Assembly (NCBI GenBank): GCA_002269645.1
Contig: NIVC01002855.1
Span: forward strand, 1-61,808
DNA length: 61,808 nucleotides
Reading direction: 5' to 3'
DNA from: Macrostomum lignano
Lineage: Eukaryota
Under the pieces are notes generated by a model. The model was not told the DNA's origin and did not search any database. It saw only the letters and a program-made list of their open reading frames with translations. Of the stretch, positions 1 to 55,722 are shown one piece after another (position 1 is the stretch's first letter; each line of letters starts with the position of its first letter). The position numbers and the translations under genes are program-made.

Positions 1-190
1 AGTGCGACCCTCCCTTTTTTCTGATTCTGTCAGGGATAATGGATGGATTTAGGTGGATTATGGAGGAGTTTTGTGAGCGAGTGCGACCTCCCTTTTTTTC
101 TGATTCTGTCAGGGACAATATAGATGGATTTAATGGGATTATGGAGGAGGTGAAAAATTTTGTCCCAGAAGCCCCCTCATGCATTCTACT
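1..190. mobile_element. Polinton/Maverick right terminal repeat remnant (copy 0), ends ...CCCCCTCATGCATTCTACT
   Basis: Near-identical to 31960-32130 and 52090-52281, which close the two Polinton genomes. Reverse complement starts AGTAGA, the AG(T)-type Polinton terminus. Confidence 0.78.
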
Positions 191-605
191 GGCTTTTGAG
201 AGTTTTGCTTCCCTGCGCATTAAATCCAGTTTGGTTCTAACGCATTGTGTTTTTTCATGTCGGCTGTCTATTTTTGGGAGTTTTTGTTCTGTTTTTTGTG
301 TTTGTTTTCTGTTTTTGTGTTTTTTCTGTTTTTTTGTTTTTTGGCGTTTGTTGCGAAGAGGTTTTGCATACTCTGTTCGGTTAGTTTTCCCATTTTTAGC
401 GTTTATCCCCTTTGCTCATTTCATCGCACTGTACGCTACGTTTCAGGTTCGATCCGCGTTTGCTAATCCAGTTCGAATATTTATCGCATCCCCGTGATTC
501 GTTTACTAACCTAATTGTTTGATCCTATTTTCGGGCTCCGCTTTTTGGGCTCCGCTTATATTAGGCTACACGGGCTCCGCTTTATGAGCTTAAGTTGACA
601 GGCCC

Positions 606-18905: not shown

Positions 18906-19374
18906 AGTTTCACCTGCCACAACGGACGGCCAGGAAAAGGCCTTCAAGACTGAAATACCAAGAGGTCAGTGTTATGCTGAGATTCTGTCCTGTAGTTTGA
19001 GATTAGAACAGCGATAAAATTATTGCTATCCAGCTAGCCAAAAAATTATGTAGATTGTAGGGCCAAATAGCGCTAAACTCCAGCAAAGCAATGAATTTTC
19101 GATTTCGAATTGAAAGGAGCTGAATAAATAGACTAACTACTGAACTAGCTATGGAATTCCAAGGAAGAGTATCGTAGCGGGCTAAGTACACAAGAGTAGA
19201 AACGTACTCTGGGTGAATTCCTATTCCTGTGCCAGACTTTACTGTACAAACTGATTCAAAAGACTTAGCAGTATAAAAAATTGAAATGTGACATGGAAAT
19301 TCTATGAGATTTCTCTAAATTAACCTATTAAGCTATTGTTTTAGAATTAAGGGGCTGTATGAACCCTGGCACAC

Positions 19375-22500: not shown

Positions 22501-22697
22501 CTAACTTTTAAGGCATATACTTTTTTCAACACACATTAATACTTGTGAAAGCAAGCAGTGTCAAAGTAGTGTCACTTTTATATATATGTTATATATTATG
22601 TTATATATATATATATATATATATACACAAGGGGTGTCCTGAAAGTAGTGTCACTTTTGCTTGCTATATTTTGCTTGCCCTTGTGTATATATATATA

Positions 22698-23139
22698 CAC
22701 AAGGGGTGTCCTGAAAGTAGTGTCACTTTTGCTTGCTTTCACAAGTATTAATGTGTGTTGAAAAAAGTATATGCCTTAAAAGTTAGTGGCTTATTTTGGC
22801 TTTCATGCCACAAAAGTCCGATTTTTATAAGTGCTTCCTGCTGTGAGCAGCATGCATTTGTTTGCATACCCTTGCCTTGGCCATAGAAATACACACCACA
22901 TAATGCTTCTATGCTCACTCAGAAGAAAGCCACAAGTAGAGCTGATCAAGCGCAGAGTTGCAAGACAGCAGCTTGCAATATTTGTTCCTGTCATGGACCC
23001 TAACATTCACTCTACAGAAGGGCAGAGACATGCAATTTTCACACTTTGGAATCTTGGTCAGAAATGCCCTGAAATTCACGAAAACCTGACCAGTATTCAT
23101 GGTCCCAATGCCATCAGTCAACGAACAGTTTGTGGGGCG
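22698..23139 (+). mobile_element. Mariner left end and transposase N-terminal HTH, truncated
   Basis: TIR AAGGGGTGTCCTGAAAGTAGTGTCACTTTT is related to the 14590 element. ORF from 22993 MDPNIHSTEGQRHAIFTLWNLGQKCPEIHENLTSIHGPNAISQRTV. Confidence 0.8.
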
Positions 23140-23784
23140 CGGTCATTTCGTCTGCCGCCTTTTCGTCTGCCGGCAATAAGTAGCAATAAGTAGCAAAATA
23201 AGTTTTATAAATGGCTGAAATTAATTTATAGTTTATTTTTAATAGTTAGAATTTACTAGTAATTTTCAGATTTAGAATAAGATGTAGTATTTGTATTTTT
23301 TATTTTGCTTATCGCAATGTTTCCAAGAATTACAATTATTCGTATATAGCTTTAATTGACTACGTAGTAAGCTGTGAATGGGATTTATAATTTGTGCGCG
23401 TGTAACTTTACTTATAATAAGTAAAATAATTCTAACTCGACTAATTGCTTTTGAGCTTTGAAGCTTTGAGACGGTTAAGAGATAGTATGGCGTCATGCCA
23501 TATCATGACGAAAAAAATGCATTGAATTCGTTAAATTGCGTAGTTTTTAAATATAAACAAAAATATTCAGAAATTACTCGTTTAAGTCATTACTACTAAG
23601 AAATGATCCGATATCTTAATCACTGTTATCTCAAATATCTCAAATCTCAAATAAATGACAACAACTGACATATATTACACTTATTAATAAAACTTTACTA
23701 TTCGTTGGCAGACGAAACGACTGTATCGTACTCTTGCAGACGAAAGCTGGGTGGCAGACGAACTGGCGGCAGACGAAACGACCG
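23140..23784. mobile_element. MITE with TIR CGGTC(A/G)TTTCGTCTGCCGCC
   Basis: 23140-23159 inverted to 23765-23784, with repeated GGCAGACGAA subterminal motifs. No TSD found. Confidence 0.7.
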
Positions 23785-23897
23785 TCGTCTATTGGATCCA
23801 ATAGACGACGGTACTATAGTGGACTATTGGATCCACCTACAAACTGGGTTAGGTGGATCCAATAGTTTGAAGCTGGCAGAGCTAATCAGAGCTCTAC

Positions 23898-26800
23898 GTC
23901 AAGATGATCGAGATGACCATCTCGATTAATCGGTGAACTAGTCGAGATGAACACCCAACACCGAAGAAGACTCACTCGTATCTTCGTAATAGACCACACA
24001 TAAAGATACCGATTCCCATACGTTTGTTTACGTACGACGAGTGTCGTCCTTCGTGAATATTTTTAGACTGAAAGCACCGTACTTTCGATTTTATTCGCTG
24101 ATTGAAAAATTCGATATACTAAAAAAACTTGAGTAGGAGACTTTACTTGAATAGGAGCTAACGGGAACTTTGTATGGGATACTAACTACAATCGTGGGGA
24201 AATAGAAAATGAACGAAGAGGACATCGACGAAATCAAAAAAAGCGGACAAAGCGCGATTACGAGGTCATTAACGACTTTATTCAGGTGTACGTCGTGGGT
24301 GTCTCGGCTCGCCCTAACGCTAACCCCGACACTACTGACCGTTGCAACTCTGTCGACGTCGTCTAGGTCTATCTTGTCTGTGTCTAGGATCTTAGTATAA
24401 CGACATCAGCTTTTTAAATGTCACCGACAGTATCGCGAATTAAAAGAAACACAACACCTTTTATAAAAAAAGTTACAGTAGAGCGTAAAAAACTTAGAGG
24501 TAAGAGGTGGTTAGCTTTAACAACTCTCAATGTTCTTTACTGCCCCATCTCAAAAACAACGAGTACTCCGCGTGATCCACGACACCCACGTAAGCCTAGT
24601 ATTTCTCTTAAAACTCGTAGGTAAAAATCCCTTAAATTTTTTTTAGCTGTTGATCAAACACCACCAATCTAAAAAAAAATGAAAACTAACGAAGCAGACG
24701 TCACTGCCGTTGCGCCCAGAGAAGCTTAGACGGAGAAGTAACAGATACTCGAGGTAAGATGTGAACTAGAGCTTGTTTGGCCAACCGAGTGCTTTAAAAC
24801 CCAATCACTAGTTTGGCCAACCGAGTGCTTTAAACACCAGTCACCAGTTCAGCCAACCTAGTGAATAAAGGGAACACCAGACAACACGGAGTTAAGTCGC
24901 AGTTACAAAAACTCTAATACGTTCGCAAGTTCTGCTGACTAAGAAGAGTTGCTAAAGACGGTAAGCCATTTTTAATTTAGATTTTTCTGAAATTAACGTA
25001 GTTAAGAAAGAAACTAAGCTAGTACGTTGCGACAACTGACTTAACGACTTTATTCAGGTGTACGTCGTGGGTGTCTCGGCTCGCCCTAACGCTAACCCCG
25101 ACACTACTGACCGTTGCAACTCTGTCGACGTCGTCTAGGTCTATGGCCATCTTGTCTGTGTCTAGGATCTTAGTATAACGACATCAGCTTTTTAAATGTC
25201 ACCGACAATATCGCGAATTAAAAGAAACACAACACCTTTTACAAAAAAAGTTACAGTAGAGCGTAAAAACTTAGAGGTAGTTAGCTTTAACAACTCTCAA
25301 TGTTCATTACTGCCCCATTTCAGCCAGACTTATAAATGTCATCCACGTAAGTCTAAGCCACGTAGGTCCGAACCACGGTCCAAAACACACAAGCTTAAGC
25401 CACGGTAACCACGACAGCCATAAAATCCAAGTCGCATAACTCTGACTAGCATATCTCTTAAAACAACCCGGTAAAAAAAAGGGATCTTTTTATTTTTTTA
25501 ATATTTTGATAGGCCAAACTTCTAGACAAAAGAGAAACGAGAACTAAAAACAGTAAAGTAGACATCTTTACTGGCCTGCTCGTCATCTAAGACGAAGTTG
25601 TCATAGTTATAGTCCTTCTAACACATGAGGGAGTTCTGCTGACTAAGAAGAGTGGCTAAAGACGGTAAGCCATTTTTGATTTAGATTTTTCTGACATAAA
25701 CGTCATTAAGAATGAAACTAAACTAGTACGTTGCGACAACTGACTTAGTACTTGAGAAGATTTAAGGAGTGAAACGGACACAACCAACGCTGCAAAAGAG
25801 ATTAAGATAGTACGTTGCGACAACTGACTCAGTACTTGAGAAGATTTAAGGAGTGAAATGGACACAACCAACGCTGCAAAAGAGATTAAGATAGTACGTT
25901 GCGACAACTAACTCAGTATTTGAGAAGATTTAATGAGTGAAATTGACACAAACACTTTTGAGGAAGAAGTTCTTATGCGTAGGCGGATAGTCACCTTAAA
26001 GGTCTTCTAATGGACAGCTACAATTGGATAACTAAACGCTCTGACGGCTTCAATAAAGACTGGATTCAAGTAATCAACGCACACGTTTGACGCGTATTTC
26101 GAATAGTGAAAGTTTGAAGACGGACCGGTGAAAATACGCCTCTAGAAGATACAAATAGACATCGTCTACGGAACTAGCGAGATTAACAAAGTCAGACAAA
26201 AATAAGTCAAACTAGAGATCCTAGAAAAGCAGCGACAACTATATAACGGACAGATCCTACCTATAGACTCGACTACATTCTCACGACAACGGTCTTTACC
26301 TAAGTGGACGTTTTAATTATCTGTAGAAAATTATCGTTTAAAATTTAATGTCAAGAAAAAAGGAACAACTAGTACTGTTTGACTATACCAACCAAGGTGA
26401 AAAGCGTCGTCTCCAATTGTTTAAGAAGAACACTTTAAAAAGACAAACTCAAAAAACAACCTAAATACTTTATCCGACCGCGTTACTGGAGTAACATTTT
26501 AGAAAAATCGGATAGGACACCTTACCAACCTTTGTCTTCTTAGTCTAACGTCAAGGGTGCTTAACAAAACAAGCCCTCGAGCTTGGTCAAGACACGTTAT
26601 ATTTAATGTAATGTTAACAATACAGCAGGAGAACATTTTATCAAAAGATAGACGAAGACACCCGGTCAGTATGTTAGTAGTTTCTGCTAGTTTACGAAAG
26701 AGGGGAAAAGATCGAGTAGACCAACCCCATCTTCAAACCAGAAACCTAGGTGGACGCCTAGAGGTATCCACTTGTAAATTACAAGACGGTAAAAAGCAAC

Positions 26801-27465
26801 AGAAATTCCACGAAACGTATAAGTCGTCGATGTTAAAGACCCAATGACCCTTCCAAAACAACCAATAATTTTGTAACTTATTACAGGAGAAACAAGTCAA
26901 ACAAAACTTCGGGACGTTAGTTGTAAAATATGAGTAGAACTATGTCACACCCTCTCATCTACACGTCTCACAGTATCAGCTATTTCGGTCCAGATTCTTC
27001 GTACAATTTCTGATTTACAAAATGGACTTGGACTACTTGGTTGTTGTTACGTAGACTTCACTGAGCCCTAACTGAGCACTACTCTTTTGAATTAGACTAA
27101 TGCGCAGGTCACTCCTAACTTCAGCAAACTTTTCAGGTAAAAAAGATACTACTTTTTTTACACATAACAGGAAATAACAAGTAAGCATAGGTACCAATAA
27201 AACAGCGCCGCTCCGATCAAAGACATTAAAGTTTACCTCTTACAGACTACGGCATTCGACGGCTTTATCCTGCGTTTTTCCGGCTTAAACTTGCGTTTTC
27301 AACGGGTCACAGATACCGAGTCAACAAACCTGACGTGTGATCGGGAGCGCGGCTTTAACTTGCGTTTTTGCTGCTTTAACTAACGTTTTTCAATATTATT
27401 CAGTAAATCTTCTACACAGTAAAACCCTGAACCTACACAGTAAAACCCTGAACCTACACAGTAAA
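23898..27465. other. 3568-bp block that is the in-place complement (not reverse complement) of mariner + Polinton sequence
   Basis: Complementing base by base without reversal reproduces, in the same order, the sequence of 46060-48200 and the reverse complement of 22770-22950. Both edges fall back into register with the flanks. Confidence 0.95.
26342..27139. pseudogene. A32-like packaging ATPase, readable only by reading the + strand backwards
   Basis: Backward reading from 27139: MDFSNDFNPHWTRNQIKFSHHESIPSHFRCIVVGSSGSGKT ... LIVFDD ... FTRGRHNNCNVIYIAQNWFELPNKTIRGNCN. Several frameshifts. Confidence 0.9.
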
Positions 27466-27557
27466 CGGGACTTAGATGTGTCATTTCGGGACTTAAATAT
27501 GTCATTTCTGGACTTAAATCTGTCATTTCCTGACTTAAATGTGTCATTTCGGGACTT
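27412..27557. repeat. 21-bp tandem repeat x7 (GATGTGTCATTT(T/C)GGGACTTA) between ATPase and core gene; shorter array at 48180-48263
   Basis: Period 21 is kept across the complement/normal boundary at 27465/27466. Confidence 0.85.
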
Positions 27558-27582
27558 GTCTTGTACCCTCGGAAAGTACCCT

Positions 27583-27969
27583 TTAGTCAAATTTAAAACC
27601 ACTTCCTTTTTTAATGCTAGCTCTCATCTTCTCATAGACTGCAGGGTCCACACTGTCTGGATTTGGGGCCAGCGGAGCCAGCGGGGCCAGCGGCTGAATC
27701 TCCTGTTTAGGTGTTACAGTATCCTTTATCTTTTTGGCTGCTGTGGCTACACTGCCAGCCGCTTCGGCAACGTTCTTGATGTTCTCTTTGTTCTCTCCAA
27801 TGACCTTAAAAATCTTGGCCCCCTGAGCGATCAAATCGGCAAGGCCATTCCCAGAGCGTTCTTTTCTTGGATAGTGGCCTGCAGGGAAAAGGCAAGATCC
27901 GCGTTTAATGAGATTAAGTTCCTCTTTGTCATAGTATTTGTCAATGTCTTTTTCGAAAATAAGAGGCAT
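27583..27969 (-). CDS. Polinton small basic/amphipathic virion (core/membrane-active) protein
   Basis: MPLIFEKDID...KRGSCLFPAG...GNGLADLIAQGAKIFKVIG...KKGSGFKF. Conserved in copy 2. Gly motifs resemble adenain cleavage sites (inference). Confidence 0.6.
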   Translation of the reverse strand: MPLIFEKDIDKYYDKEELNLIKRGSCLFPAGHYPRKERSGNGLADLIAQGAKIFKVIGENKENIKNVAEAAGSVATAAKKIKDTVTPKQEIQPLAPLAPLAPNPDSVDPAVYEKMRASIKKGSGFKFD

Positions 27970-27985
27970 TTTTACTTGAAATAAA

Positions 27986-28315
27986 TTATTTTTTGTTGAA
28001 CCGCGAAAGCAGAAGCTCTCTCGCCCTCTTATCGATGTATTTTCTCTCAAGCATTTTGTCCAGGATGTTGACAAATTCTTTTCTATTCTCGTCTTTCATT
28101 CCGGTCTTTGCCGCTCCTAGAAGAACCACTACTCGCTTGTAGATTTCAGTTATTCCTTTTCCAGATTTGGGCGGTTGGTTTTGGGGTTGTGGAGTTGGTT
28201 GGGTTTGAAGCTGCTGGGGAGGTGATGAAAAAGACCGCTCACTTTCAGAGATGGAACTGTCATGTGGTGCCTGTCTTTGTTGAGGTGTGAAAACTCTTTG
28301 ATTGATTCTATTCAT
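27986..28315 (-). CDS. Polinton conserved hypothetical protein
   Basis: C-terminal EIYKRVxVLLGAAKTGMKDENRKEFVNILDKMLERKYID is shared with 48691-48969. Confidence 0.55.
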   Translation of the reverse strand: MNRINQRVFTPQQRQAPHDSSISESERSFSSPPQQLQTQPTPQPQNQPPKSGKGITEIYKRVVVLLGAAKTGMKDENRKEFVNILDKMLERKYIDKRARELLLSRFNKK

Positions 28316-28560
28316 TCGATCTGGGGAGTGTTGTTCTAAGCGTTGCCAGGCATCTGGGTGATCATTTTTATATTTAGCTACTTAATTTTGAGTCGGATCT
28401 GCATTTTCCAGTTGCCTGAGTACTTCTGTAAAATGTTGCTGCTGTTGTGGTGGTTGCTGTTGTTGTTGTGGTTGTGGTTGTTGTTGTTGCTGTTGTTGTT
28501 GTTGTTGTTCTAGATTTCATGACTTCCCCCTGATCTGGCAAACCAAACCATTGTTTAAAG

Positions 28561-29270
28561 CTAGTGCTTGTACTTTTTTAATTTAGTCAGGTTGACACCG
28601 CCATCGTACATATGTTTCAGAACTTCTGGGACCATTAGTATTTCTATATCTCTAGCAAGAGAAAAAGTCACTAGATCTCTGTAGTTCTTTAGCTGCTTGT
28701 CCGAGATTCTCTCTTGGTTCTTGGTCATAAAAGTCAGTAAGGCGTCTGTGATAGGAATTTTCATAGTTTCTGAGCCTTTGACAACAGAAATATTTTCCTT
28801 ATTTATGTTGATATAATATTTCACTGGTTCATTATAAATGTTTTTCTCCACATACTTATTCCAAATACATATTTCCCATCATGTTCTACACGCTCTACTG
28901 GTCCAAAAATGTTATCTGTCACTTTTAGTTGTAATTGACGTGGTTGTGGTTGTTGTGGTTGCGGCTGTATCTGTGGTTGTGGTTGTTGTGGTTGCGGTTG
29001 TATCTGTGGTGCTTCTGGAATTTTGCCCAAAACCTTTTGCACCAGGGTTTCCTGCTGTATGTCGTCGATAGTTTCTTTGACCTAATCAGTATTTTTCTTA
29101 GCTTCTCCATACCCAGGTTTATGAAACTCTGTGGCTGCTTGGACAAACTCATTGTAGGATTGTTGCTCCTTATTTATTAGCCCGGTAACTCGTTTCTGTG
29201 CTTGTGCTAGCTTCTCCAATTCAGATATCTGCTGTGTACTTTTTCGCTTCATTTCTTATTTTATTTTATT
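28561..29270 (-). pseudogene. Disrupted Polinton hypothetical gene with Gln/Pro repeats
   Basis: Fragmented ORFs homologous to 49076-49936 (LEKLAQAQKRVTGLIN / LKKLAQAEKRVTGLIN). Confidence 0.5.
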
Positions 29271-29282
29271 TTTAGTTAAAAA

Positions 29283-30577
29283 ATGAACGACCCACTGACA
29301 CCAGTTTTCTACAAAATTAACAAGCCTATTTTGAGTGATGATAGCACAATCAAAGCGACTCAGGTAAGAGTTCCCAGTCAGGAAAATCAGAATGAAACTA
29401 ATTTGGGTCCAGGTCAAACGCTGACATTCACATATAATGGATGTTCGTCTTTGGTCAGTGTCCACAGTCTAAGGAGCGGCTTCTATATGACGTTTCAATT
29501 CAAAACTAAAGGAGGCGCAGACGCCGCTCATGCTAATGATGATCTACACAATGCGGATGTCGCACTAACCAGTAATTTCTGGGCTTATATGTTCAAAGAG
29601 TTTAATGTGTCCAATGGAAGTACAGAGTTGGAAAGAATAGCAAACTTTGGTGTGGTCTATGATACCCACTGCTTGATTGAGAACCCGGATTTTATTCAGA
29701 TGGGGAGCGGTGCTGGATTCATCCCCAATGAACAGACAGGAGATGAGAATGACCCTGGTTACAAAAAGAGAAAGGAGAGATACAACTATGCTCTTGCTGG
29801 TGAGAACGATGCTGCTAAGAATCCGCTGTTTAGGTCTGTAGATATTTTTGTACCTTTGAGGTTTATGAGTGGTTTCTGTAATAGCTTTAATCGGTTGACA
29901 AGCAACTTCAGCTACACATTTAGACTGACTAGAGATGATCGGAACAGAGGAATTTGGTCGGGGGTCAATCATACATCGATGGAGATTAAGCTAACTAGCG
30001 TGGAGCTGTACTTAGAAATTATTGAGCCCAAGACTGCACTCAAAGCTGAATACTTGAAGGCGAGTGAGAAAGACATTGATGTTGCTTATACAGCTTATAT
30101 GTGCAGAGATGAGCGGAATGACGCAAGACACAATATTTGCATTAAAAAAGGCTCCTGTAGCAATCAAGGTACATTATCGTCACTATGAGGAGTACGACTA
30201 ATGTAGGTAGATATCTACATGGAAACGTTCGATCGATTCAACATGAGATCAGTGACAATTTATACCCTGCATTGCCACAAAATGGGAATTTCTCGGAGAA
30301 CAAGATTAGTAAGTTTTACAATGAACTGTCGGACCTGGCTGTCAAAGAGAATAACGGTATTGTTTTGACAACCTTGCAGTATAAAAAACTATAGCCAATA
30401 TTTGGTGTTGATGTGACTGCTAGACAAATGCCTACAGACAATAGCCCTGTTAACATTGTGACTAATATCGAGCGGAAAGAATTTGGTGCCGCAACGGCTG
30501 TTGATCTGTTTATTATCTATGCATTTGAGAGGAAAATCAAGGTCAATATGATCAATAACTCGTCTAGTAAAGTTTGA
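29283..30577 (+). pseudogene. Major capsid protein (double jelly-roll type), frameshift near 30150-30180 and TAG at 30392
   Basis: Begins ILSDDSTIKATQVRV...NLGPGQTLTF; contains DIFVPLRFMSGFC and, after the stop, PIFGVDVT...FIIYAFERKIKVNM. Position upstream of the penton fits. Confidence 0.8.
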
Positions 30578-30599
30578 ATAATTTTTTTTCAATAAAAAA

Positions 30600-31457
30600 A
30601 TGGAAGCCATAGCCGAAAGACTAAACAACATTGTTTCACACTCTAAGGAGAGCATTCCAATCACTGTAGCGGGTCGCATTACTGACTCAAACGGAATCTT
30701 CATTCAAAAATTGGAGCAACCACTTCGTTTGGATCCCGAGGCGAATTACCACGTCTATCTCAATGATTTCACTGGGTGGTCAAATGTTCCCAATGTGACA
30801 GCGGAAAATAACAAGTTTTATTACAAATGGAAGCGTACTACAACAGAGGTTGTGATATTTCCTGTCAGCACACAGAGCGTGGATACTTATAATTACTTCT
30901 TGGAGAACGTCTTCACTAAACGAAAGCATTTTGAGATACCGGATGAAAGCAAACCAGAAAATAAACTGTTCCCTGTTAGATTAACTTATGATCTAACTGT
31001 CATGAGAGTTGTCTTGCAAGTTCATAAGGACGCAGAGGTAGAGTTTAAAGATGGCACTTGGTATCGCGAGTTGGGATTTGAAAAGAGAGTTTATGGTGGC
31101 ACCACAGACCAAAGCCCGCCGCAGGCGCCTGGCACTGTTGCTGTGTCCCGGCTAATATCCGGTATGTACTTGGCGCCAAATATCGCTGACATTGTCAAAG
31201 GTTTGAATATATTAATTCGCAGCAATCTGAGCCATGATTGGATATTCAAGGGCAAACGAACCAACATACTTTTTAACATTTCAAACTCTGTTGCTGGTGG
31301 CAAAATGCTTGTGCAAAAGCCAAACCCCGTGAAAAGAGTGATTCTGAGTAAAAGAGAGATACATGAAATCGTTCTGCAGTTTGAAACAGAGGATGGAGTT
31401 GGTGTCGATTTTAACGGGGAAGAGTTTGTGCTAACAATTATTATTGAGAGAATGTGA
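30600..31457 (+). CDS. Minor capsid (penton) protein, intact ORF of 285 aa
   Basis: PLRLDPEANYHVYLNDFTGWSNVPNVTAENNKFYY ... IHEIVLQFETEDGVGVDFNGEEFVLTIIIE is the typical Polinton/adintovirus penton pattern. Confidence 0.8.
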   Translation: MEAIAERLNNIVSHSKESIPITVAGRITDSNGIFIQKLEQPLRLDPEANYHVYLNDFTGWSNVPNVTAENNKFYYKWKRTTTEVVIFPVSTQSVDTYNYFLENVFTKRKHFEIPDESKPENKLFPVRLTYDLTVMRVVLQVHKDAEVEFKDGTWYRELGFEKRVYGGTTDQSPPQAPGTVAVSRLISGMYLAPNIADIVKGLNILIRSNLSHDWIFKGKRTNILFNISNSVAGGKMLVQKPNPVKRVILSKREIHEIVLQFETEDGVGVDFNGEEFVLTIIIERM

Positions 31458-31574
31458 GTCGCCTTCAGACTTGTAAAATTAAGATATAAGCCGCCAGGCA
31501 CAACCTTGTAGTTGGCTACTACAACTGCCTTATAACTTCAGCAAAGTTATAATAGCTGTCAAAATCGTTAATGA

Positions 31575-31829
31575 CTACTCCGTGTTTTCAAACCAGTGAG
31601 ATTTAAGTGCTTGATTAATATTAACGACATTGATATCAAACTCAGGCCAATATTTTCTCATGTACTCGCTGCATTCAAGTTTGCATCGGTACTTACTCTT
31701 GTAATTAGGCTCGTGCACTTTGTAATAGGAACCTGAAGAGACAACTGGAAACATTTTTATTGAGAATTTTTTTTTCAAAGGGTGAGGACCCTGCGCTGAT
31801 GATTTAAAGTCTTTGGGATCTGGTAGCAC
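31575..31829 (-). CDS. Small Polinton ORF next to the terminal repeat
   Basis: SYYKxHEPNYKSKYRCKLECSEYMRKYWP is conserved in copy 2 (51617-51853). Confidence 0.45.
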   Translation of the reverse strand: MLPDPKDFKSSAQGPHPLKKKFSIKMFPVVSSGSYYKVHEPNYKSKYRCKLECSEYMRKYWPEFDINVVNINQALKSHWFENTE

Positions 31830-32269
31830 GTTGCGAATTGAATGTGGGGAGAAGAATGCAGATTATTTTCTGATTGTTTCGAAGATGCTATAGGTGGATG
31901 TCAGTGGATTTTGTCAGTGTCAGTGAGCATAACAGGTGTCAATGGACACTTGTTATGCTCTGATTCTGTCAGGGATAATATGGATGGATTTAATAGGATA
32001 TGTTCTAAGTTTTCGGAGCAAGTGCGACCCCCATTTTTTCTGATTCTGTCAGAGATAATGTAGATGGATTTAATGGGATTATGGAGGAGGTGAAAGAATT
32101 TGTCCCAAAAGCCCCCTCATGCCTTCTACTAATCTGAGGTGTGAATTAAGTGAATCAGTGAGAAGGTTAAATCTGACAGTTATTTTTGTCAGTTTTATTC
32201 CTTTGTTCGCCGATGGCTCAGATGAGTAGCTAAGCTAGTAGGCGCCGGTCGCAGTGGACCAATGGCAAG

Positions 32270-44929: not shown

Positions 44930-45185
44930 GGGGAAAGAAAGGAGAGAAGGGGGAGAGAAGAGGGCAAAGATGAGAGAAGAGGGCAAAGATGAGAGAAGAG
45001 GGAAGAGAGAAGAGAGGGGAGTAAGAGAAGGAGAGAGAAAAAAGAGGAGAGATCGGAGAGAGGAGAGAGGAGAGAGAAGAGGAGGAGAGATAGAATAGAA
45101 AGAAGAGAGGAGAGAGGAAAGATAAGAAAGCAGAGAGAAGAGAGGAGAGAGAATAGAGCAGAGTAGAGATGAGAAAAGAAAGTAG
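44930..45185 (+). repeat. Polypurine (GA-rich) low-complexity tract at the left break of Polinton copy 2
   Basis: Almost only A/G. Confidence 0.9.
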
Positions 45186-45227
45186 AGCTGTCTGTCATTC
45201 CATTCCTCGTGGCACTCCAACCAATGA

Positions 45228-45440: not shown

Positions 45441-45872
45441 TTGAGATTGGGTTTAGGTTTAAGAGAAAGTTTAATAAACCTCATAAAAATTACGACAAAT
45501 AACTTTCTTGAAGATTTGGCTAACGAACTGGAAATCCCAAACTTTAGAGGAATATTTATGAGGGACACTCTGCCTGATTTTCCTCTAAGAAAAGAATGCG
45601 GCATTATGAACTTTGACACCACCGATAAACCAGGATCTCATTGGGTTTGCTGGGTGATTGATCCCGATCGCAAGCACAAGTGTTATTACTTCGATAGCTA
45701 TGGGACGGCAGTACCAGAAGAGCTAAGAAATTATATGAAGCGAAAAAATAATAAAAAAATTTATCGCTCAGATTTTATTCTCCAAGGTCTTAGCAGTGAT
45801 ATTTGCGGTGAGCTGTGCATGACTGTTTTGTATGCAATGACTAAAACACGAAAGACCTACAAGGAAATTTAG
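45441..45872 (+). CDS. Adenain-like (C5) cysteine protease; start uncertain
   Basis: NFRGIFMRDTLP, GSHWVCW (His), YYFDSYG (Asp) and QGLSSDICGELC (Gln/Cys). Confidence 0.88.
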   Translation: MRLGLGLRESLINLIKITTNNFLEDLANELEIPNFRGIFMRDTLPDFPLRKECGIMNFDTTDKPGSHWVCWVIDPDRKHKCYYFDSYGTAVPEELRNYMKRKNNKKIYRSDFILQGLSSDICGELCMTVLYAMTKTRKTYKEI

Positions 45873-45897
45873 ATTCTTACCTGTGCTTCATAAGGGT

Positions 45898-46449
45898 TCA
45901 TTGTGCATATTTCATCGTCCTTCTTGCCGAATTTTTTGCCGAATTTCTTTCCGCATAATGTTGAAGAAAGTTATCGAGTTCATTTCTCAACTGACTCATG
46001 TCATCAGTACCGACCATGTTCAAGTTCATTCGAATTGATTGGTCATAAAGATCCTTAATGGTTTTGAACTCATCCTCTGAAATGAACTTATCCTCAGTTG
46101 CCCTTGAAACGTACCCTGTGATTGAAGTGTGCACCCCTTTCTCTTTTACTTGCTTCTCCTGTAGCTGTTTTAGTTTTTTTCGCCTGCTCCGCGCTAATGC
46201 TCCAGTAATTGCTGAAATAAGTCCACATGCAGCACCCACAGAGCCGAGCGGGATTGCGATTGGGGCTGTGATGACTGGCAACGTTGAGACAGCCGCAGCA
46301 GATCCAGATACCGGTAGAACAGACACAGATCCTAGAATCATATTGCTGTAGTCGAAAAATTTACAGTGGCTGTTATAGCGCTTAATTTTCTTTGTGTTGT
46401 GGAAAATGTTTTTTTCAATGTCATCTCGCATTTTTTGAATCTCCATCAA
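45898..46449 (-). CDS. Polinton hypothetical protein with hydrophobic hairpin and basic patch
   Basis: 183-aa ORF; two hydrophobic stretches followed by RSRRKKLK; homologues inside the complemented block. Confidence 0.6.
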   Translation of the reverse strand: MMEIQKMRDDIEKNIFHNTKKIKRYNSHCKFFDYSNMILGSVSVLPVSGSAAAVSTLPVITAPIAIPLGSVGAACGLISAITGALARSRRKKLKQLQEKQVKEKGVHTSITGYVSRATEDKFISEDEFKTIKDLYDQSIRMNLNMVGTDDMSQLRNELDNFLQHYAERNSAKNSARRTMKYAQ

Positions 46450-46679
46450 TCGAAATTGTTGAGAGTTACAAGTAATGACGGGGTAAAGTCGGTCTGAATA
46501 TTTACAGTAGGTGCATTCAGATTCGGTGCATCCAGGCTTGGTGCCAGGTTTTGTGTGTTCGAATTCGGTGCCATTGAGTTTGGTGCTGTCGGTATTTTAG
46601 GTTCAGCGTATTGAGACTGATCGTATAGAGAATTTTGTTGGGCCATTTTTTTCCCTAGAAAAATAAAAAAATTATAAAA

Positions 46680-47342
46680 CTATCCGGTTTGAAGATCTGT
46701 TTTCTCTTTGCTCTTGATTTTTGTCATTTCATCTGTAGAAATGACCGGACGAGCAGTAGATTCTGCTTCAACAGTATCAATATCAGGAAGATTGTGTACT
46801 CCCTCAAGACGACTGATTCTTCTCACCGATTTCTGCCATTCGGTAAAAACTAAATCTAAAAAGACTTTATTTGCAGTAATTCTTACTTTGATTTGATCAT
46901 GCAACGCTGTTGACTGAGTCATGAACTCTTCTAAATTACTCACTTTATCTGTGTTTGTGAAAACTCCTTCTTCAAGAATACGCATCCGTCTATCAGTGAA
47001 ATTTCTCAGAAGATTAATTGTCGATGTTAAACTTGTTTTTAAGCCGTTGATTTGCGAGACTGCCGAAGTTATTTCTGACCTAAGTTCATTAGTTGCGTGT
47101 GCAAACTGCGCATAAAGCTTATCACTTTCAAACTTCTGCCTGGCCACTTTTATGCGGAGATCTTCTATGTTTATCTGTAGCTGGTGCATGGAGCGCTCTA
47201 ATTGTTTCAGTCTGTTTTTATTCAGTTTGATCTCTAGGATCTTTTCGTCGCTGTTGATATATTGCCTGTCTAGGATGGATATTTGAGCTGATGTAAGAGT
47301 GCTGTTGCCAGAAATGGATTCACCTGCAAAATTAATAGACAT
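46680..47342 (-). CDS. Polinton coiled-coil protein
   Basis: 220-aa heptad-rich ORF; homologue in the complemented block. Confidence 0.55.
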   Translation of the reverse strand: MSINFAGESISGNSTLTSAQISILDRQYINSDEKILEIKLNKNRLKQLERSMHQLQINIEDLRIKVARQKFESDKLYAQFAHATNELRSEITSAVSQINGLKTSLTSTINLLRNFTDRRMRILEEGVFTNTDKVSNLEEFMTQSTALHDQIKVRITANKVFLDLVFTEWQKSVRRISRLEGVHNLPDIDTVEAESTARPVISTDEMTKIKSKEKTDLQTG

Positions 47343-47358
47343 CTTTTAATAGCAAATT

Positions 47359-48138
47359 TTAAATTACAGTTCTTTTTTCCTTGTTGATCATGACAAACTG
47401 ATAGGGTTGGTTCCACTTTTCGCAGCAGAGGTTAACAAATTCTTCTTGTGAAATCTTTCTGCTTGAGTTTTTTGTTGGATTTATAAAATAGGCAGGCGCA
47501 ATGACCTCATTGTAAAATCTTTTTAGCCTGTCCTGTGGAATTGTTGGAAACAGGAGAATCAGATTGCAGTTCCCATGAATTGTTTTGTTCTGGAGCTCGA
47601 ACATTTTTACAAATTGTTATGTCGCCCTCTTGTAAAATAGTTTTCTATCTGCTTCTGTGGGCCAGTCATACAATCATCAAAGACGATCAAATGCTTTCTC
47701 CCTTTTTCTAGCTCATCTGGTTGGGGTAGAAGTTTGGTTTTTGGATCAGCCTGTGGATCTCCATAGGTGAACACTTTGATGTTCTGCCATTTTTCATTGT
47801 CTTTGAGGTGCTTTGCATATTCAGCAGCTACAATTTCTGGGTTACTGTGAAGGTTTTGTTGGTTATTAAAACATTGAATAATGTCCTCTTTGTTCAGTTT
47901 GTTTTGCAATCCAGAAATCAACATTTTATACTCATCTTGATACAGTGTGGGAGAGTAGATGTGCAGAGTGTCATAGTTGATAAAGCCAGGTCTAAGAAGC
48001 ATGTTAAAGACTAAATGTTTTACCTGAACCTGATGAACCAACAACAATGCATCTGAAGTGACTCGGGATTGACTCGTGATGAGAAAACTTAATCTGATTA
48101 CGCGTCCAGTGAGGATTGAAGTCGTTTGAAAAGTCCAT
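47359..48138 (-). pseudogene. A32-like packaging ATPase, frameshifted after Walker A and with a deletion after RGRHNN
   Basis: GSSGSGKT, then a frame change to HLVFNML...LIVFDDCM...FTRGRHNN, then FELQNKTIHGNCN in a separate ORF. Confidence 0.88.
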
Positions 48139-48288
48139 TTTTCCTATGATGAAAAAAATTAAATAATAAATCATTTAGAAGATGTGTCATTTTGGGTCGT
48201 AGATGTGTCATTTCGGGACTTAAATGTGTCGTTTCTGGACTTAAATGTGTCCTTTCGGGACTTGTCTTGTACCCTCGGAAAGTACCCT

Positions 48289-48969
48289 TTAGTCAAATTT
48301 GAAACCACTTCCTTTTTTAATGCTAGCTCTCATCTTCTCATAGACTGCAGGGTCCACACTGTCTGGATTTGGGGCCAGTGGAGCCAGCGGGGCCAGCGGC
48401 TGAATCTCTTGTTTAGGTGTTACAGTATCCTTTATCTTTTTGGCTGCTGTGGCTACACTGCCAGCCGCTTCGGCAACGTTCTTGATGTTCTCTTTGTTCT
48501 CTCCAATGACCTTAAAAATCTTGGCCCCCTGAGCGATCAAATCGGCAAGGCCATTCCCTGAGCGTTCTTTTCTTGGATAGTGGCCTGCAGGGAAAAGGCA
48601 AGATCCGCGTTTAATGAGATTAAGTTCCTCTTTGTCATAGTATTTGTCAATGTCTTTTTGAAAATAAGAGGCATTTTTACTTGAAATAAATTATTTTTTG
48701 TTGAACCGCGAAAGCAAAAGCTTTCTCGCCCTCTTATCGATGTATTTTCTCTCAAGCATTTTGTCCAGGATGTTGACAAATTCTTTTCTATTCTCATCTT
48801 TCATTCCGGTCTTTGCCGCTCCTAGAAGAACCGGCACTCGCTTGTAGATTTCAGCTATTCCTTTTACGGAAGAGCTTGGCGGTGATTCGAATGATAGGTC
48901 AGGGGTGGATGTTCCTGGTGAGGGTTGCTGTAGCCTAGGTGTGAATACTCTGTCATTGATTCGCTTCAT
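48289..48969 (-). pseudogene. Copy-2 homologues of the 27583 and 27986 genes (first one frameshifted)
   Basis: Near-identical sequence to 27583-28130. Confidence 0.6.
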
Positions 48970-49964
48970 TCGCTCTGAGGAGAACTGCTCTAATTGTCGC
49001 CAAGCATCAGGGTATGTATCTTTGTACTGCGAAACATAAATCGGTTCTGCAGCGTCAAGTTGATCAAGTACTTGTTCAACCAGGATTTTTTGTTGCTGTG
49101 GAGGCGGAGGTTGCTGTGGTTGATGCTGTAGCTGTGGTTGTGGTTGTTGTTGTTGCTGTTGTTGTGGTTGTTACTGCTGTTATGGTTGCTGTTGTGGTTG
49201 CTGCTGTTGTGGTTGCTGCTGTTGTGGTTGCTGCTGTGGTTGTGGTTGTTGTCTTATGACAGTATTTGTATTTACTAAACCTGTTCAAGACAATCCCGTT
49301 TTCATGTAAAATTTTCAAAACACCGTTGTTCTTGAGCATAATTATGTCCCTATCGAGAGCAAAGGTAACAAGATCTTTGTAATTTTCGAGCTGCTTTTTA
49401 GACGTTTTCTCTAGATTTTTAGTCATGCAATCAAGTAAAGTTTTAGTGAACTGGATTCTTTTAGTTTTTGCGCCTTTATTGATTGAAATATTTTCCTTTG
49501 TCACTTCAATGTTGTAATCCGCCGGTTGCCCGGTAATATTTTTTCACCAGGCGCTAATTCCAAAAATATATTTTCCATCATCCACTACGGGGCCAAAAAA
49601 GTTATCCGTCACTTTCATCTGCACCGGTTGTGCTTCTGGTTGTCCTGGTTGCTGAGCCTGTGGTTGTCCTGGTTGCTGAGCCTGTGGTTGTCCCGGTGAA
49701 GATGGAATTTTACCCAATGTGTTTTACAAGTGGCTCTCTTCAATATCATCAACTGTTTCCTTCACAGTGTCGATGTTTTTCTTCGCTTCTGTGTATCCGG
49801 GTTTGTGAAATTCGGTGGCTGCTTGGACGAATTCATTGTAAGATTGTTGTTCTTTGTTGATTAGTCCGGTAACTCGTTTCTCTGCCTGCGCCAGCTTTTT
49901 TAGTTCAGAGATATGATATGAACTTTTCCGCTTCATTTTTAAATATTCTTTCTTTTGTTGAAAA

Positions 49965-51257
49965 ATGAACCATCCCCTGACACCGGTTTTCTATAAGATT
50001 AACAAACCCATTTTGAGTGATGACAGCACTATTAAAGCGACTCAGGTAAGAGTTCCCAGTCAGGAAAATCAGAATGAAACTAATTTGGGTCCAGGTCAAA
50101 CGCTGACATTTACATACAATGGATGTTCGTCTTTGGTCAGTGTCCACAGTCTAAGGAGCGGCTTCTATATGACGTTTCAATTCAAAACTAAAGGAGGCGC
50201 AGACGCCGCTCATGCTAATGATGATCTATACAATGCGGATGTCGCACTAACCAGTAATTTCTGGGCTTATATGTTCAAAGAGTTTAATGTGTCCAATGGA
50301 AGTACATAGTTGGAAAGAATAGCAAACTTTGGTGTGGTCTATGATACCCAGTGCTTGATTGAGAACCCGGATTTTATTCAGATGGGGAGCGGTGCTGGAT
50401 TCATCCCCAATGAACAGACAGGAGATGAGAATGACCCTGGTTACAAAAAGAGAAAGGAGAGATACAACTATGCTCTTGCTGGTGAGAACGATGCTGCTAA
50501 GAATCCGCTGTTTAGGTCTGTAGATATTTTTGTACCTTTGAGGTTTATAAGTGGTTTCTGTAATAGTTTCAATCGGTTGACAAGCAACTTTAGCTACACA
50601 TTTAGACTGACTAGAGATGATCGGAACAGAGGAATTTGGTCGGGGGCCAATCATACATCGATGGAGATTAAGCTAACTAGCGTGGAGCTGTACTTAGAAA
50701 TTATTGAGCCCAAGACTGCACTCAAAGCTGAATACTTGAAGGCGATTGAGAAAGACATTGATGTTGCTTATACAGCTTATATGTGCAGAGATGAGCGGAA
50801 TGACGCAAGACACAATATTTGCATTAAAAAGGCTCCTGTAGCAATCCAAGGTACAAGGCTCGTACATTATTGTCACTATGAGGAGTACGACTAATGTAGG
50901 TAGATATCTACATGGAAACGTTCGATCGATTCAACATGAGATCAGTGACAATTTATACCCTGCATTGCCACAAAATGGGAATTTCTCGGAGAACAAGATT
51001 AGTAAGTTTTACAATGAACTGTCGGACCTGGCTGTCAAAGAGAATTACGGTATTTTTTTGACAACCTTGCAGTATTAAAACTATATCCAATATTTGATGT
51101 TGATGTGACTGCTACAGACAATAGCCCTGTTAACATTGCGACTAATGTCGAGCGGAAAGAATTTGGTGCCGCAACGGCTGTTGATCTGTTTATTATCTAT
51201 GCATTTGAGAGGAAAATCAAGGTTAATATGATCAATAACTCGTCTAGTAAAGTTTGA
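49965..51257 (+). pseudogene. Major capsid protein, copy 2, with TAG at 50307 and further lesions
   Basis: Almost identical to 29283-30577. Confidence 0.8.
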
Positions 51258-51278
51258 ATAATTTTTTTTCAATAAAAA

Positions 51279-51550
51279 ATGGAAGCCATAGCCGAAAGAC
51301 TAAACAACATTGTTTCACACTCTAAGGAGTGTGATTCCAATCACTGTAGCGGGTCGCATTACTGAGTCAAACGGAATCTTCATTCAAAAATTGGAGCAAC
51401 CACTTCGTTTGGATCCCGAGGCGAATTACCACGTCTATCTTAATGATTTCACTGGGTGGTCAAATGTTCCCAATGTGACAGCGGAAAATAACAAGTTTTA
51501 TTACAAATGGAAGCGTACTACAACAGAGGTTGTGATATTTCCTGTCAGCA
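51279..51550 (+). pseudogene. Penton, 5' fragment; internal deletion removes the rest
   Basis: Matches 30600-30870, then jumps to sequence matching 31465 onward. Confidence 0.8.
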
Positions 51551-52283
51551 CTTGTCAGCACTTCAGACTTGTAAAATTACGATATAAGCCGCCAGGTACA
51601 ACCTTGTAGTTGGCTACTACAACTGCCTTATAACTTCAGCAAAGTTATAATAGCTGTCAAAATCGTTAATGACTACTCCATGTTTTTCAAACCAGTGGCT
51701 TTGGAGAGCTAGATTAATATTAGGGACATTGATATCAACGTAGGGCCAATATTTTCTCATGTACTCGCTGCATTCAAGTTTGCATCGGTACTTGCTCTTG
51801 TAATTAGGCTCGTGCGTTTTGTAATAAGAACCTGGAGAGACGATTGGAAGCATTTTTAGAGAAAATTTAGATTTTTTTTCGGAGGATGAGCACCCTGCGC
51901 TGATAATTTAAAGTCTTTGGGATCTGATTTCACCGCTTCGGATTGAATGTGGGGAGAAGAATGCAGATTATTTTCTGATTGTTTCGAAGATGCTATGGGT
52001 GGATGTCAGTGGATTATGTCAGTGTCAGTGAGCATAACAGGTGTTAATGGACACCTGTTATGCTCTGATTCTGTCAGGGATAATGCTCTGATTCTGTCAG
52101 GGATAATGCTCTGATTCTGTCAGGGATAATATGGATGGATTTAACAGGATTATGGAGGAGGTTTGTGAGCGAGTGCGGCCCCCTTTTTTTCTGATTCTGT
52201 CAGGGATAATATGAATGGATTTAATGGGATTGTGGAGGACATAAAAAATTTTGTCCCAAAAGCCCCCTCATGCCTTCTACTCT

Positions 52284-52379
52284 GAGGTGCAAATCTGTGA
52301 CGATATGGGCAAGCTAATGGATCGGATTCTTCGAGGCAAAACTGTTTTATCGATCAACATTCGTGAAATTAAGCTATAA
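52284..52379 (+). pseudogene. Probable penton C-terminus of a second Polinton lineage
   Basis: EVQICDDMGKLMDRILRGKTVLSINIREIKL resembles the I.DD.G....F..GK....L..R penton end. Short, so tentative. Confidence 0.45.
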
Positions 52380-55633: not shown

Positions 55634-55722
55634 GTAGCGCCTGCTGCTGCTGCTGCTGCTCGCGCTCGGCCGGTTGTAGCGCCTGCTGCTGCTGCTGCTC
55701 GCGCTCGACCGGTTGTAGCGCC
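55634..55722 (-). repeat. (GCA)n-GGCGCTACAACCGG(T/C)CGAGCGCGA minisatellite; other blocks at 55241-55270, 59501-59611 and 60400-60542
   Basis: Same unit in all four blocks; source of the poly-A/S/Q ORFs in the track. Confidence 0.92.

What the first reader, a model, noticed from the sequence alone, without database searches (positions are those of the whole stretch)
23898..27465. 3.57-kb block written as the complement, not the reverse complement, of its expected sequence
Seen directly. 24128 TTGAGTAGGAGACTTTACTTGAATAGGAG complements base for base, in the same direction, to AACTCATCCTCTGAAATGAACTTATCCTC, as at 46068. The match runs colinearly through the TM, coiled-coil and ATPase genes to the 21-bp repeats. 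The genes read out only when the + strand is read 3'->5' (GSSGSGKT, FTRGRHNNCNVIYIAQNWF). Right edge: the repeat GATGTGTCATTT|CGGGACTTA switches from complemented to normal at 27465/27466 with no phase change. Left edge: complementing from 23898 restores AGCTCTAC|CAG, the exact reverse complement of restored 23915-23925, and makes CTGGCAGAGCTAAT (23873) a 13/14 match to restored 23915-23928. The block is not a copy of the 46-48 kb region: it has synonymous differences and keeps the ATPase segment deleted there. Established knowledge: inversion, transposition and template switching give reverse complements, and no known polymerase makes a kilobase parallel complement. Inference: two scar-free edges point to an in-silico step (reverse without complement, or the converse). 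If raw reads confirmed it, it would imply an unknown polarity-reversing copying process.
Basis: partly seen in the sequence, partly recalled or inferred. Interest (0 to 1): 0.92.

Follow-up and report, generated by a model that had tools for sequence, protein, structure and literature searches.

The report
Complement-only assembly error in flatworm contig
A 3,568-base stretch of a public Macrostomum lignano (flatworm) genome contig is written as the base-for-base complement of the real sequence without being reversed; a second contig of the same assembly carries the same locus correctly, so this is a software error in the record and not a biological feature.

Summary
Window 23898-27465 matches its paralogue at 46062-48234 only when complemented base for base without reversal (93-98% identity). 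From 27466 onward the same duplication continues in normal polarity.

The window is the whole GenBank contig NIVC01002855.1 (Macrostomum lignano assembly Mlig_3_7, GCA_002269645.1). The copy of that record held by the tools contains the block as written, so the block was not planted in the window.

A sister contig of the same assembly, NIVC01003271.1, carries the same locus. It is identical up to 23897 and from 27466. Between those points it equals the block only when read backwards without complementing: 3561 matches, 0 substitutions, 7 small length differences. The sister version has normal dinucleotide polarity and readable genes.

The underlying DNA is ordinary. It is the end of a mariner-like remnant plus three genes (membrane protein, coiled-coil protein, A32-type packaging ATPase) of a decayed, partial Maverick/Polinton-like element.

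The block carries an excess of private small length differences. This suggests the error arose before short-read polishing. The software step responsible is not identified.

There is no biological novelty. The value is for assembly quality control.

The parts
23898..27465 (.). Block written as the complement, not the reverse complement, of the real sequence (3,568 bases).
   Evidence: Complement-only BLAST to 46062-48234. Equals sister contig L007 1766-5336 only when that segment is read backwards without complementing: 3561 matches, 0 substitutions, 7 length differences. Dinucleotide polarity is swapped.
22754..24134 (+). Mariner-like element remnant. Its right-hand terminal region (23935-24134) lies inside the block in complemented form. 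It contains the Mos1-type HTH at 22993-23139 and a MITE-like insert at 23140-23784.
   Evidence: Pfam HTH_48, 25.1 bits against a cut-off of 24.1. 23935-24134 matches the reverse complement of 22754-22950 only after complementing (87.8%). 32-nt terminal inverted repeats of the insert, 91% complementary.
24119..24502 (.). Membrane-protein gene of Maverick-like copy 1. It is readable only 3'->5' on the + strand and is truncated at its C-terminal end where it meets the mariner-like remnant. One truncation, no frameshift, no stop.
   Evidence: Aligns to residues 2-131 of the 183-aa copy-2 ORF with 121/128 identical.
24805..25268 (.). Second, partial copies of the coiled-coil gene (24805-25040) and the membrane-protein gene (25008-25268), from an internal duplication of about 770 bp that copy 2 lacks.
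   Evidence: Self-matches 24269-24552 = 25041-25322 and 24928-25043 = 25632-25747. Second placements. Also present in the sister contig, since the block is identical to it.
25511..26325 (.). Coiled-coil protein gene of copy 1, containing an 84-bp tandem repeat at 25724-25951. It is readable only 3'->5' and has one frameshift in this contig, none in the sister contig.
   Evidence: 202/220 identical to the copy-2 ORF. Tandem Repeats Finder row.
26363..27130 (.). A32-type packaging ATPase gene of copy 1 (Walker A GSSGSGKT), readable only 3'->5'. Two frameshifts here, one in the sister contig, two in copy 2.
   Evidence: Aligns to residues 2-242 of the 264-aa ATPase of relative L002. That relative hits Pfam Pox_A32 at 32.7 bits against a cut-off of 22.8.
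27161..27382 (.). Stretch between the ATPase gene and the 21-bp repeats that has no counterpart in copy 2.
   Evidence: Gap between the complement-only matches ending at 27160 and starting at 27383. It lies outside the ATPase homology bounds.
27412..27557 (.). One 21-bp tandem repeat array cut by the right edge of the block. 27412-27465 is in complemented form and 27466-27557 in normal form, in phase.
   Evidence: Tandem Repeats Finder reports two arrays meeting at 27465/27466, with consensus units that are base-for-base complements of each other. Period-21 matches peak at 27465 only (109 of 125). Copy 2 has the array at 48182-48263.
27466..32141 (+). Remainder of Maverick-like copy 1 in normal polarity:
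- small ORFs 27583-28074 (-), 27986-28315 (-) and 28561-28851 (-)
- double-jelly-roll major capsid gene 29283-30574 (+): one frameshift, one in-frame stop
- penton-like gene 30600-31457 (+): intact
   Evidence: Direct matches to copy 2. tblastn bounds from relatives. Break counts. The relatives of the capsid ORF carry PF21738.
45441..52289 (+). Maverick-like copy 2, all in normal polarity:
- adenain-like protease 45441-45872 (+)
- membrane protein 45898-46449 (-)
- coiled-coil 46680-47342 (-)
- ATPase 47380-48132 (-): two frameshifts
- 21-bp repeats 48182-48263
- 163-aa-gene homologue: one frameshift
- capsid gene 49965-51254 (+): three frameshifts, one stop
- penton-like gene 51279-51549 (+): one frameshift, truncated
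   Evidence: Pfam Peptidase_C5, 21.6 bits against a cut-off of 21.3. tblastn with relatives. Break counts.

Best explanation
The block is a software artefact in the public assembly Mlig_3_7 of Macrostomum lignano (contig NIVC01002855.1, which is this whole window). At some step a 3,568-base substring was complemented base by base without being reversed. An equivalent route is that a reverse-strand piece was reversed but not complemented. Length and position were unchanged, so the sequence stays colinear with its surroundings and the junctions carry no scar.

The real DNA at this place is ordinary. It consists of 237 bases of the end of a mariner-like remnant, followed by the membrane-protein, coiled-coil and packaging-ATPase genes of a decayed, partial Maverick/Polinton-like element. 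That element is duplicated about 22 kb downstream.

Shown:
- the complement-only relation
- the exact edges
- presence of the block in the held copy of the public record
- existence of the same locus in normal polarity in a sister contig

Inferred:
- The error arose before the short-read polishing step. No read can map to a complement-only stretch, so the block kept private small length errors.
- The program responsible is not identified.

The confidence of 0.96 is for 'artefact of the record, not biology'. The sub-claim that it arose before polishing I hold at about 0.6.
For: 1. Source. The kinase ORF is 100% identical to BOX15_Mlig009921g1 of M. lignano, on a contig of 61808 bases, which is the window length. 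Record NIVC01002855.1:3183-28923 is identical to the window at all 25741 positions, including the block.

2. Sister contig NIVC01003271.1 (L007).
- Ordinary identity covers window 29230-27466 (100% over 1765 bases) and 23897-22686.
- The 3571 bases between have no ordinary match to the block, but they match copy 2 normally.
- Block against L007 segment: read backwards without complementing gives 3561 matches, 0 substitutions and 7 gap events. The other three orientations give 61-65%, which is background.
- Ordinary identity continues 0 bases into the block from either side. Complement identity starts at the first base.

3. Reference-free polarity. Observed/expected CG/GC is 1.20/0.76 in the block, against 0.67/1.11 in the paralogue. 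TA/AT, CA/AC and TG/GT are swapped likewise. The log-likelihood ratio is -0.026 per base in the block and +0.028 in the sister segment.

4. Coding. Genes read only 3'->5'.

5. Edges at arbitrary places. One edge is inside a 21-bp repeat array and the other inside a transposon end.

6. Timing.
- Five of the seven length differences are private to the block when copy 2 is used as outgroup.
- The block has one more frameshift than the sister contig in the ATPase gene and one more in the coiled-coil gene.
- The pipeline was Canu 1.4, then Pilon 1.20 with Illumina and RNA-seq reads, then SSPACE 3.0 (PMC5730564).

7. Near-identical duplicate loci are expected. The assembly has about 180 Mb of duplicated sequence and the species is a neopolyploid (PMC5730564; PMC10733133).
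Against: - No reads could be examined, so absence of read support for the block as written is inferred and not shown.
- I checked only the copy of GCA_002269645.1 held by the tools, not the live GenBank entry.
- None of the three named programs is known to me to produce complement-only output, and no report of this class of error was found.
- The timing argument is statistically modest. It rests on 5 against 1 polarised length differences, and on 7 gap events in 3.6 kb against 18 in about 21 kb of flanks.
Confidence: 0.96

Rival explanations
1. The change was introduced after the assembly was published. It could have arisen in the copy of the assembly used by this scan and its tools, or been planted as a test.
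For: I could not consult the live GenBank record. Only one such block was found in the 86 kb of this assembly that I could examine.
Against: The record fetched independently through the gene look-up is identical to the window. The block shows an excess of private small length differences and extra frameshifts relative to the sister contig. That is expected if the block was already unmappable at polishing. It is not expected if a finished, polished sequence was altered later.
Confidence: 0.03
2. The block is physically real in one of the homoeologous chromosome copies. It would be a parallel (non-antiparallel) complement made by an unknown polarity-reversing copying process.
For: The two contigs are distinct haplotypes or homoeologues (22 substitutions and two large insertions or deletions over about 18 kb). 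So a difference between them could in principle be real.
Against: - There are 0 substitutions between the block and the sister segment.
- All three genes are unreadable on either strand.
- The dinucleotide signature is exactly mirrored.
- The edges fall at arbitrary positions.
- From established knowledge, all known template-directed polymerases make antiparallel complements.
Confidence: 0.002
3. It is an ordinary inversion or misoriented segment (reverse complement), either real or a misassembly.
For: None beyond the general frequency of such events.
Against: The reverse complement of the sister segment aligns to the block at 61%, which is background. The reverse-only reading gives 100%. Ordinary two-strand BLAST of the block finds nothing at 46-48 kb.
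Confidence: 0.001
4. It is a chance or low-complexity resemblance, such as mirror repeats.
For: Short complement-only hits do occur at low-complexity mirror repeats in the window (282-343, 28433-28518, 44936-45187).
Against: There are about 2.5 kb of complex coding sequence at 93-98%. Identity to the sister contig is 100%. The polarity score is 103 against a simulated maximum of 10.6.
Confidence: 0.001

Closest known systems
Misoriented segments and inversion misassemblies in draft genomes
   Same: A block inside a contig has the wrong orientation relative to its true neighbours, breaks genes, and would be flagged by read mapping.
   Different: Those are reverse complements. They still align with ordinary two-strand tools and remain readable on the other strand. 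This block is complemented without reversal, so it matches nothing on either strand and has mirrored dinucleotide statistics.
Palindromic chimeras of long reads (missed hairpin adapter). This comparison rests on my own knowledge, not on a tool result.
   Same: An artefact of long-read data or processing that produces an abnormal strand relation inside one sequence.
   Different: Those give a forward copy followed by its reverse complement, that is, an extra inverted duplication. Here nothing is duplicated and the relation is complement-only.
Maverick/Polinton virus-like elements (defined in PMC4028283 and PMC5499653)
   Same: The underlying DNA encodes an adenain-like protease, a double-jelly-roll capsid protein, a penton-like protein and an A32-type ATPase. 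Relatives at 46-78% capsid identity also carry protein-primed polymerase B and rve integrase.
   Different: Neither window copy has a detectable polymerase or integrase. Most genes carry frameshifts or stops. They are decayed partial copies.
Parallel-stranded DNA (my own knowledge; known from in-vitro oligonucleotide work)
   Same: It has the formal strand relation that the block would imply if it were physical.
   Different: No polymerase is known to copy kilobases in parallel. Nothing here calls for it, because the normal version of the locus exists in the same assembly.

Membership tests
In-silico complement-without-reverse artefact | The block matches its homologues only after base-for-base complementing, in the same direction. 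| tested here: met
   Identity to the sister contig is 100% in that relation and 61-65% in the other three.
In-silico complement-without-reverse artefact | Position and length are unchanged and the junctions carry no scar (no duplication, deletion or filler at either edge). | tested here: met
   The flanks are identical to the sister contig up to 23897 and from 27466, and complement identity starts at the next base. The 21-bp repeat phase is kept.
In-silico complement-without-reverse artefact | Polarity-sensitive statistics are mirrored (frequency of dinucleotide XY takes the value normal for YX). | tested here: met
In-silico complement-without-reverse artefact | The true sequence of the locus is available in normal polarity from an independent source. 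| tested here: met
   Sister contig NIVC01003271.1.
In-silico complement-without-reverse artefact | No sequencing reads support the block or its junctions as written. | not testable with these tools
Indirect hint only: private length errors consistent with no polishing.
Biological inversion | The block is the reverse complement of the reference arrangement. | tested here: not met
   61% identity, which is background.
Maverick/Polinton element (underlying DNA) | Double-jelly-roll major capsid protein and penton-like minor capsid protein. | tested here: met
   The capsid ORF has relatives at up to 78% identity that carry PF21738. Its own hit is below the cut-off (18.8 bits). The penton-like gene is homologous to the neighbour of the capsid gene in relatives but has no family hit.
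Maverick/Polinton element (underlying DNA) | A32/FtsK-type packaging ATPase. | tested here: met
   Copy 2 and the block (read 3'->5') align to the ATPase of relative L002, which passes Pfam Pox_A32. Walker A motif is present.
Maverick/Polinton element (underlying DNA) | Adenain-like cysteine protease. | tested here: met
   Peptidase_C5, 21.6 bits against a cut-off of 21.3, in copy 2 only.
Maverick/Polinton element (underlying DNA) | [quoted passage not shown] | tested here: not met
   The polymerase (DNA_pol_B_2) and integrase (rve) of relative L001 give no tblastn hit anywhere in the window. The copies are therefore partial remnants and not complete members.
Maverick/Polinton element (underlying DNA) | Terminal inverted repeats and target-site duplication. 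| not tested
   The element ends were not defined. Copy 1 is cut by the mariner-like remnant.
Tc1/mariner element (left part of the block) | Mos1-type HTH of the transposase and inverted terminal regions. | tested here: met
   HTH_48 above the cut-off. The terminal regions 22754-22950 and 23935-24134 pair as inverted repeats only once the block's complementing is taken into account. No catalytic domain was seen, so this is an internally deleted remnant.

The most novel reading that the evidence does not exclude
The block exists physically in one homoeologous chromosome copy of line DV1 as a parallel complement of the normal sequence, made by an unknown polarity-reversing copying process. The evidence does not strictly exclude this, because no reads were seen and the two contigs are distinct haplotypes.
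Probability: 0.002. Interest if true: 0.98.

Novelty: not a real feature. Interest (0 to 1): 0.15.

Why it matters
Biologically it does not matter. The locus is a decayed virus-like element remnant next to a transposon remnant.

It matters for data quality. A widely used reference assembly holds a 3.6-kb stretch that aligns to nothing, hides three genes and cannot attract reads. This class of error is invisible to ordinary two-strand alignment and dot plots.

The reference-free polarity score used here separated the block cleanly from the background. The score is the log-likelihood of forward against backward reading under a low-order Markov model. Combined with complement-only self-alignment, it could be run over whole assemblies to find further cases. 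That would show whether a particular program version produces them.

Tried and rejected
- Exact-product look-ups of two window ORFs found nothing on record.
- A homologue search with the coiled-coil ORF found nothing.
- Rfam and tRNA scans of the window were empty.
- Left edge from the sequence alone: the palindrome and direct-repeat statistic peaks at 23898, but a mock-edge control gives peaks of that size in about 5% of trials. I therefore did not rely on it. The sister contig settled the edge.
- The second-best 'reversed polarity' segment, 7261-7800 (score 15.8), was examined. It is the TTAA-rich end of a 1.9-kb insertion absent from the sister contig. It has no complement-only match and no ORF asymmetry, so I rejected it as a second block.
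- Literature searches for this class of error in assemblies or databases found nothing relevant. The phrase 'reversed but not complemented' occurs in a few papers on other topics, which I did not read.
- Two Pfam calls failed on a coordinate slip.
- I could not name the program step that produced the block.
- Disclosure: before I knew the region was a virus-like element, a complemented copy of the block and of the window was written to a scratch file as a BLAST query. Both files were deleted. All later comparisons were made in memory and printed statistics only.
Full report

Yes. An ordinary two-strand BLAST of 23898-27465 against the window finds only the block itself and its internal repeats. 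The base-for-base complement, not reversed, matches 46062-48234 colinearly in pieces of 435, 753 and 1296 columns at 93.3%, 98.0% and 93.75%. A further 85 columns match in the 21-bp repeats.

From 27474 the same duplication continues in ordinary direct orientation (27474-28160 = 48180-48865 at 96.7%; 28645-30871 = 49343-51551 at 88%; 31463-32141 = 51561-52289). One duplicated segment of about 6-8 kb therefore changes polarity part-way along.

A complement-only self-comparison of the whole window finds nothing else except short low-complexity mirror repeats.

**2. Independent, reference-free evidence**

Complementing without reversing turns every dinucleotide XY into the statistical equivalent of YX. 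The block shows this. Observed/expected CG/GC is 1.20/0.76, against 0.67/1.11 in the paralogue and 0.84/1.29 in the rest of the window. TA/AT, CA/AC and TG/GT are swapped in the same way.

I trained a low-order Markov model outside the block and scored forward against backward reading.
- The best 'backward' segment is 23527-27600, with score about 103.
- The next best segment scores 15.8.
- Forty simulated sequences give at most 10.6.

**3. Coding**

The three copy-2 proteins are the membrane protein (45898-46449), the coiled-coil protein (46680-47342) and the ATPase pieces (47359-48047), all on the minus strand. They are recovered from the block only when the + strand is read 3'->5' (scores 414-586 against 33-53 otherwise).

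An external protein behaves the same way. This is the 264-aa ATPase of a metagenomic relative (L002), which passes Pfam Pox_A32. The Walker A motif GSSGSGKT appears only in that reading.

**4. Where the window comes from**

A kinase ORF at 13183-14328 is 100% identical to BOX15_Mlig009921g1 of Macrostomum lignano, on a contig of 61808 bases, which is the window's length.

The record NIVC01002855.1 (assembly Mlig_3_7, GCA_002269645.1) was fetched for 3183-28923. It is identical to the window at all 25741 positions, block included. The anomaly is therefore in the copy of the public assembly held by the tools, not planted in the window.

**5. The decisive comparison**

The kinase has a near-identical paralogue (g2) on contig NIVC01003271.1. 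That contig (L007) carries the whole locus in the opposite orientation.
- It matches window 29230-27466 at 100% over 1765 bases.
- It matches 23897-22686 and onward at 98.8-99.8%.
- The 3571 bases between have no ordinary match to the block, but they match copy 2 normally.

When the block is aligned to that segment read backwards without complementing, there are 3561 matches, 0 substitutions and 7 small length differences (five of 1 base, two of 6). The other three orientations give 61-65%. Ordinary identity stops exactly at 23897 and 27466. Complement identity begins at 23898 and 27465 and runs 68 and 690 bases before the first length difference.

The sister segment has normal polarity statistics (+0.028 per base against -0.026 in the block).

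Duplicate, near-identical loci are expected. The assembly paper reports about 180 Mb of duplicated sequence, and the species is a neopolyploid (PMC5730564; PMC10733133).

**6. What the underlying DNA is**

*Left part of the block.* The left 237 bases (23898-24134) belong to the right end of a mariner-like remnant at 22754-24134.
- It has a Mos1-type HTH at 22993-23139.
- It holds a MITE-like insert at 23140-23784 with 32-nt inverted ends.
- Its two terminal regions pair as inverted repeats only once the complementing is taken into account.

*Rest of the block.* The remainder is the left part of copy 1 of a Maverick/Polinton-like element:
- membrane-protein gene 24119-24502, truncated by the mariner-like remnant
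- an internal duplication of about 770 bp, with partial second copies at 24805-25268
- coiled-coil gene 25511-26325, with an 84-bp tandem repeat
- ATPase gene 26363-27130
- a 222-base stretch that copy 2 lacks (27161-27382)
- the 21-bp repeat array

*Copy 1 beyond the block.* It continues in normal polarity with three small minus-strand ORFs, the capsid gene (29283-30574) and a penton-like gene (30600-31457).

*Copy 2.* Copy 2 (45441-52289) also has the adenain-like protease.

*Relatives.* Metagenomic relatives at 46-78% capsid identity carry, next to these genes, a protein-primed polymerase B and an rve integrase. Neither gene is detectable anywhere in the window.

*Break counts*:

| Gene | Copy 1 (this contig) | Sister contig | Copy 2 |
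|---|---|---|---|
| ATPase | 2 frameshifts | 1 frameshift | 2 frameshifts |
| Coiled-coil | 1 frameshift | 0 | reference ORF |
| Membrane protein | 1 truncation | 1 truncation | reference ORF |
| Capsid | 1 frameshift, 1 stop | not compared | 3 frameshifts, 1 stop |
| Penton-like | intact | not compared | 1 frameshift, truncated |
| 163-aa gene | intact | not compared | 1 frameshift |

These are dead, partial copies.

**7. How the block most likely arose**

*Shown.* A substring was complemented in place with no shift and no scar. Its edges fall inside a tandem repeat array and inside a transposon end, which are arbitrary places biologically.

*Inferred.* The step preceded short-read polishing. 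The pipeline was Canu 1.4, then Pilon 1.20 with Illumina and RNA-seq reads, then SSPACE 3.0. A complement-only stretch cannot attract reads, so it would stay unpolished. Three results are consistent with this.
- The block differs from the sister contig only by length differences: 7 in 3.6 kb, against 18 in about 21 kb of flanks, which also carry 22 substitutions.
- Five of the seven are private to the block when copy 2 is used as outgroup, against one private to the sister.
- The private differences account for one extra frameshift each in two genes.

The support is modest.

A half-executed reverse-complement would give exactly this result. Reversing a reverse-strand piece without complementing it yields the colinear complement. 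I could not identify the program responsible, and I found no published description of this class of error.

**8. Rivals**

- A real parallel complement is not strictly excluded without reads. It would need an unknown enzymology and an event so recent that no substitution separates it from the sister copy. It would also leave three genes unreadable on either strand.
- An ordinary inversion is refuted.
- Chance is refuted.
- A change introduced downstream of GenBank is unlikely, given the identical record and the unpolished look of the block.

**9.

The stretch that copy 2 lacks is not ATPase coding sequence by the alignment to the relative. Both copies cover residues 2-242 of 264, and the ATPase homology ends at 27130.

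**10. Verdict**

This is not a biological feature. Interest is low, apart from its use as a quality-control case for genome assemblies.

Noticed in passing
window 7252-9155: A 1.9-kb stretch absent from the sister contig, with a 9-base overlap at the join. Its TTAA-rich left end (7261-7800) is the second-best 'backward polarity' segment (15.8 against a simulated maximum of 10.6). It has no complement-only match and no ORF asymmetry. It is probably a transposon insertion with unusual end composition.
   Followed up: partly
window 14590-15573: About 985 bases absent from the sister contig, bounded by a 214-nt inverted repeat (14574-14787 / 15376-15589, 96.7%), inside the span of the kinase gene (13183-18923). 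It could be a foldback insertion or a long-read palindrome artefact.
   Followed up: no
window 22419-22557 and 22730-22868: A perfect 139-nt inverted repeat with a 172-nt spacer that contains two 52-nt direct repeats. It is related to the terminal region of the mariner-like remnant.
   Followed up: no
window 23140-23784: A MITE-like insert with 32-nt terminal inverted repeats (91% complementary), interrupting the mariner-like transposase remnant just after its HTH domain.
   Followed up: partly
window 55292-59938: A GC-rich (about 0.6) retroelement remnant on the minus strand, with reverse transcriptase (56832-57719) and RNase H (55621-56745) ORFs.
   Followed up: no
window 20-190, 31959-32130, 52110-52281: Three direct copies (87-90%) of a stretch of about 170 bases at the right-hand end of the duplicated Maverick-like segment. 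One lies at the very start of the contig. It may be an element terminus or a separate repeat.
   Followed up: no
window 1347-1886 (-): An ORF with weak DDE_3 and HTH_32 hits, probably a Tc1/mariner-type transposase remnant.
   Followed up: no
L001 (ERZ21818093 NODE_9039) and L002: Metagenomic relatives carry the full Maverick/Polinton gene set on one strand (A32 ATPase, capsid, integrase, polymerase B) plus a collagen-repeat protein (L001 4172-5044). In the flatworm copies the ATPase block is on the strand opposite to the capsid genes.
   Followed up: partly
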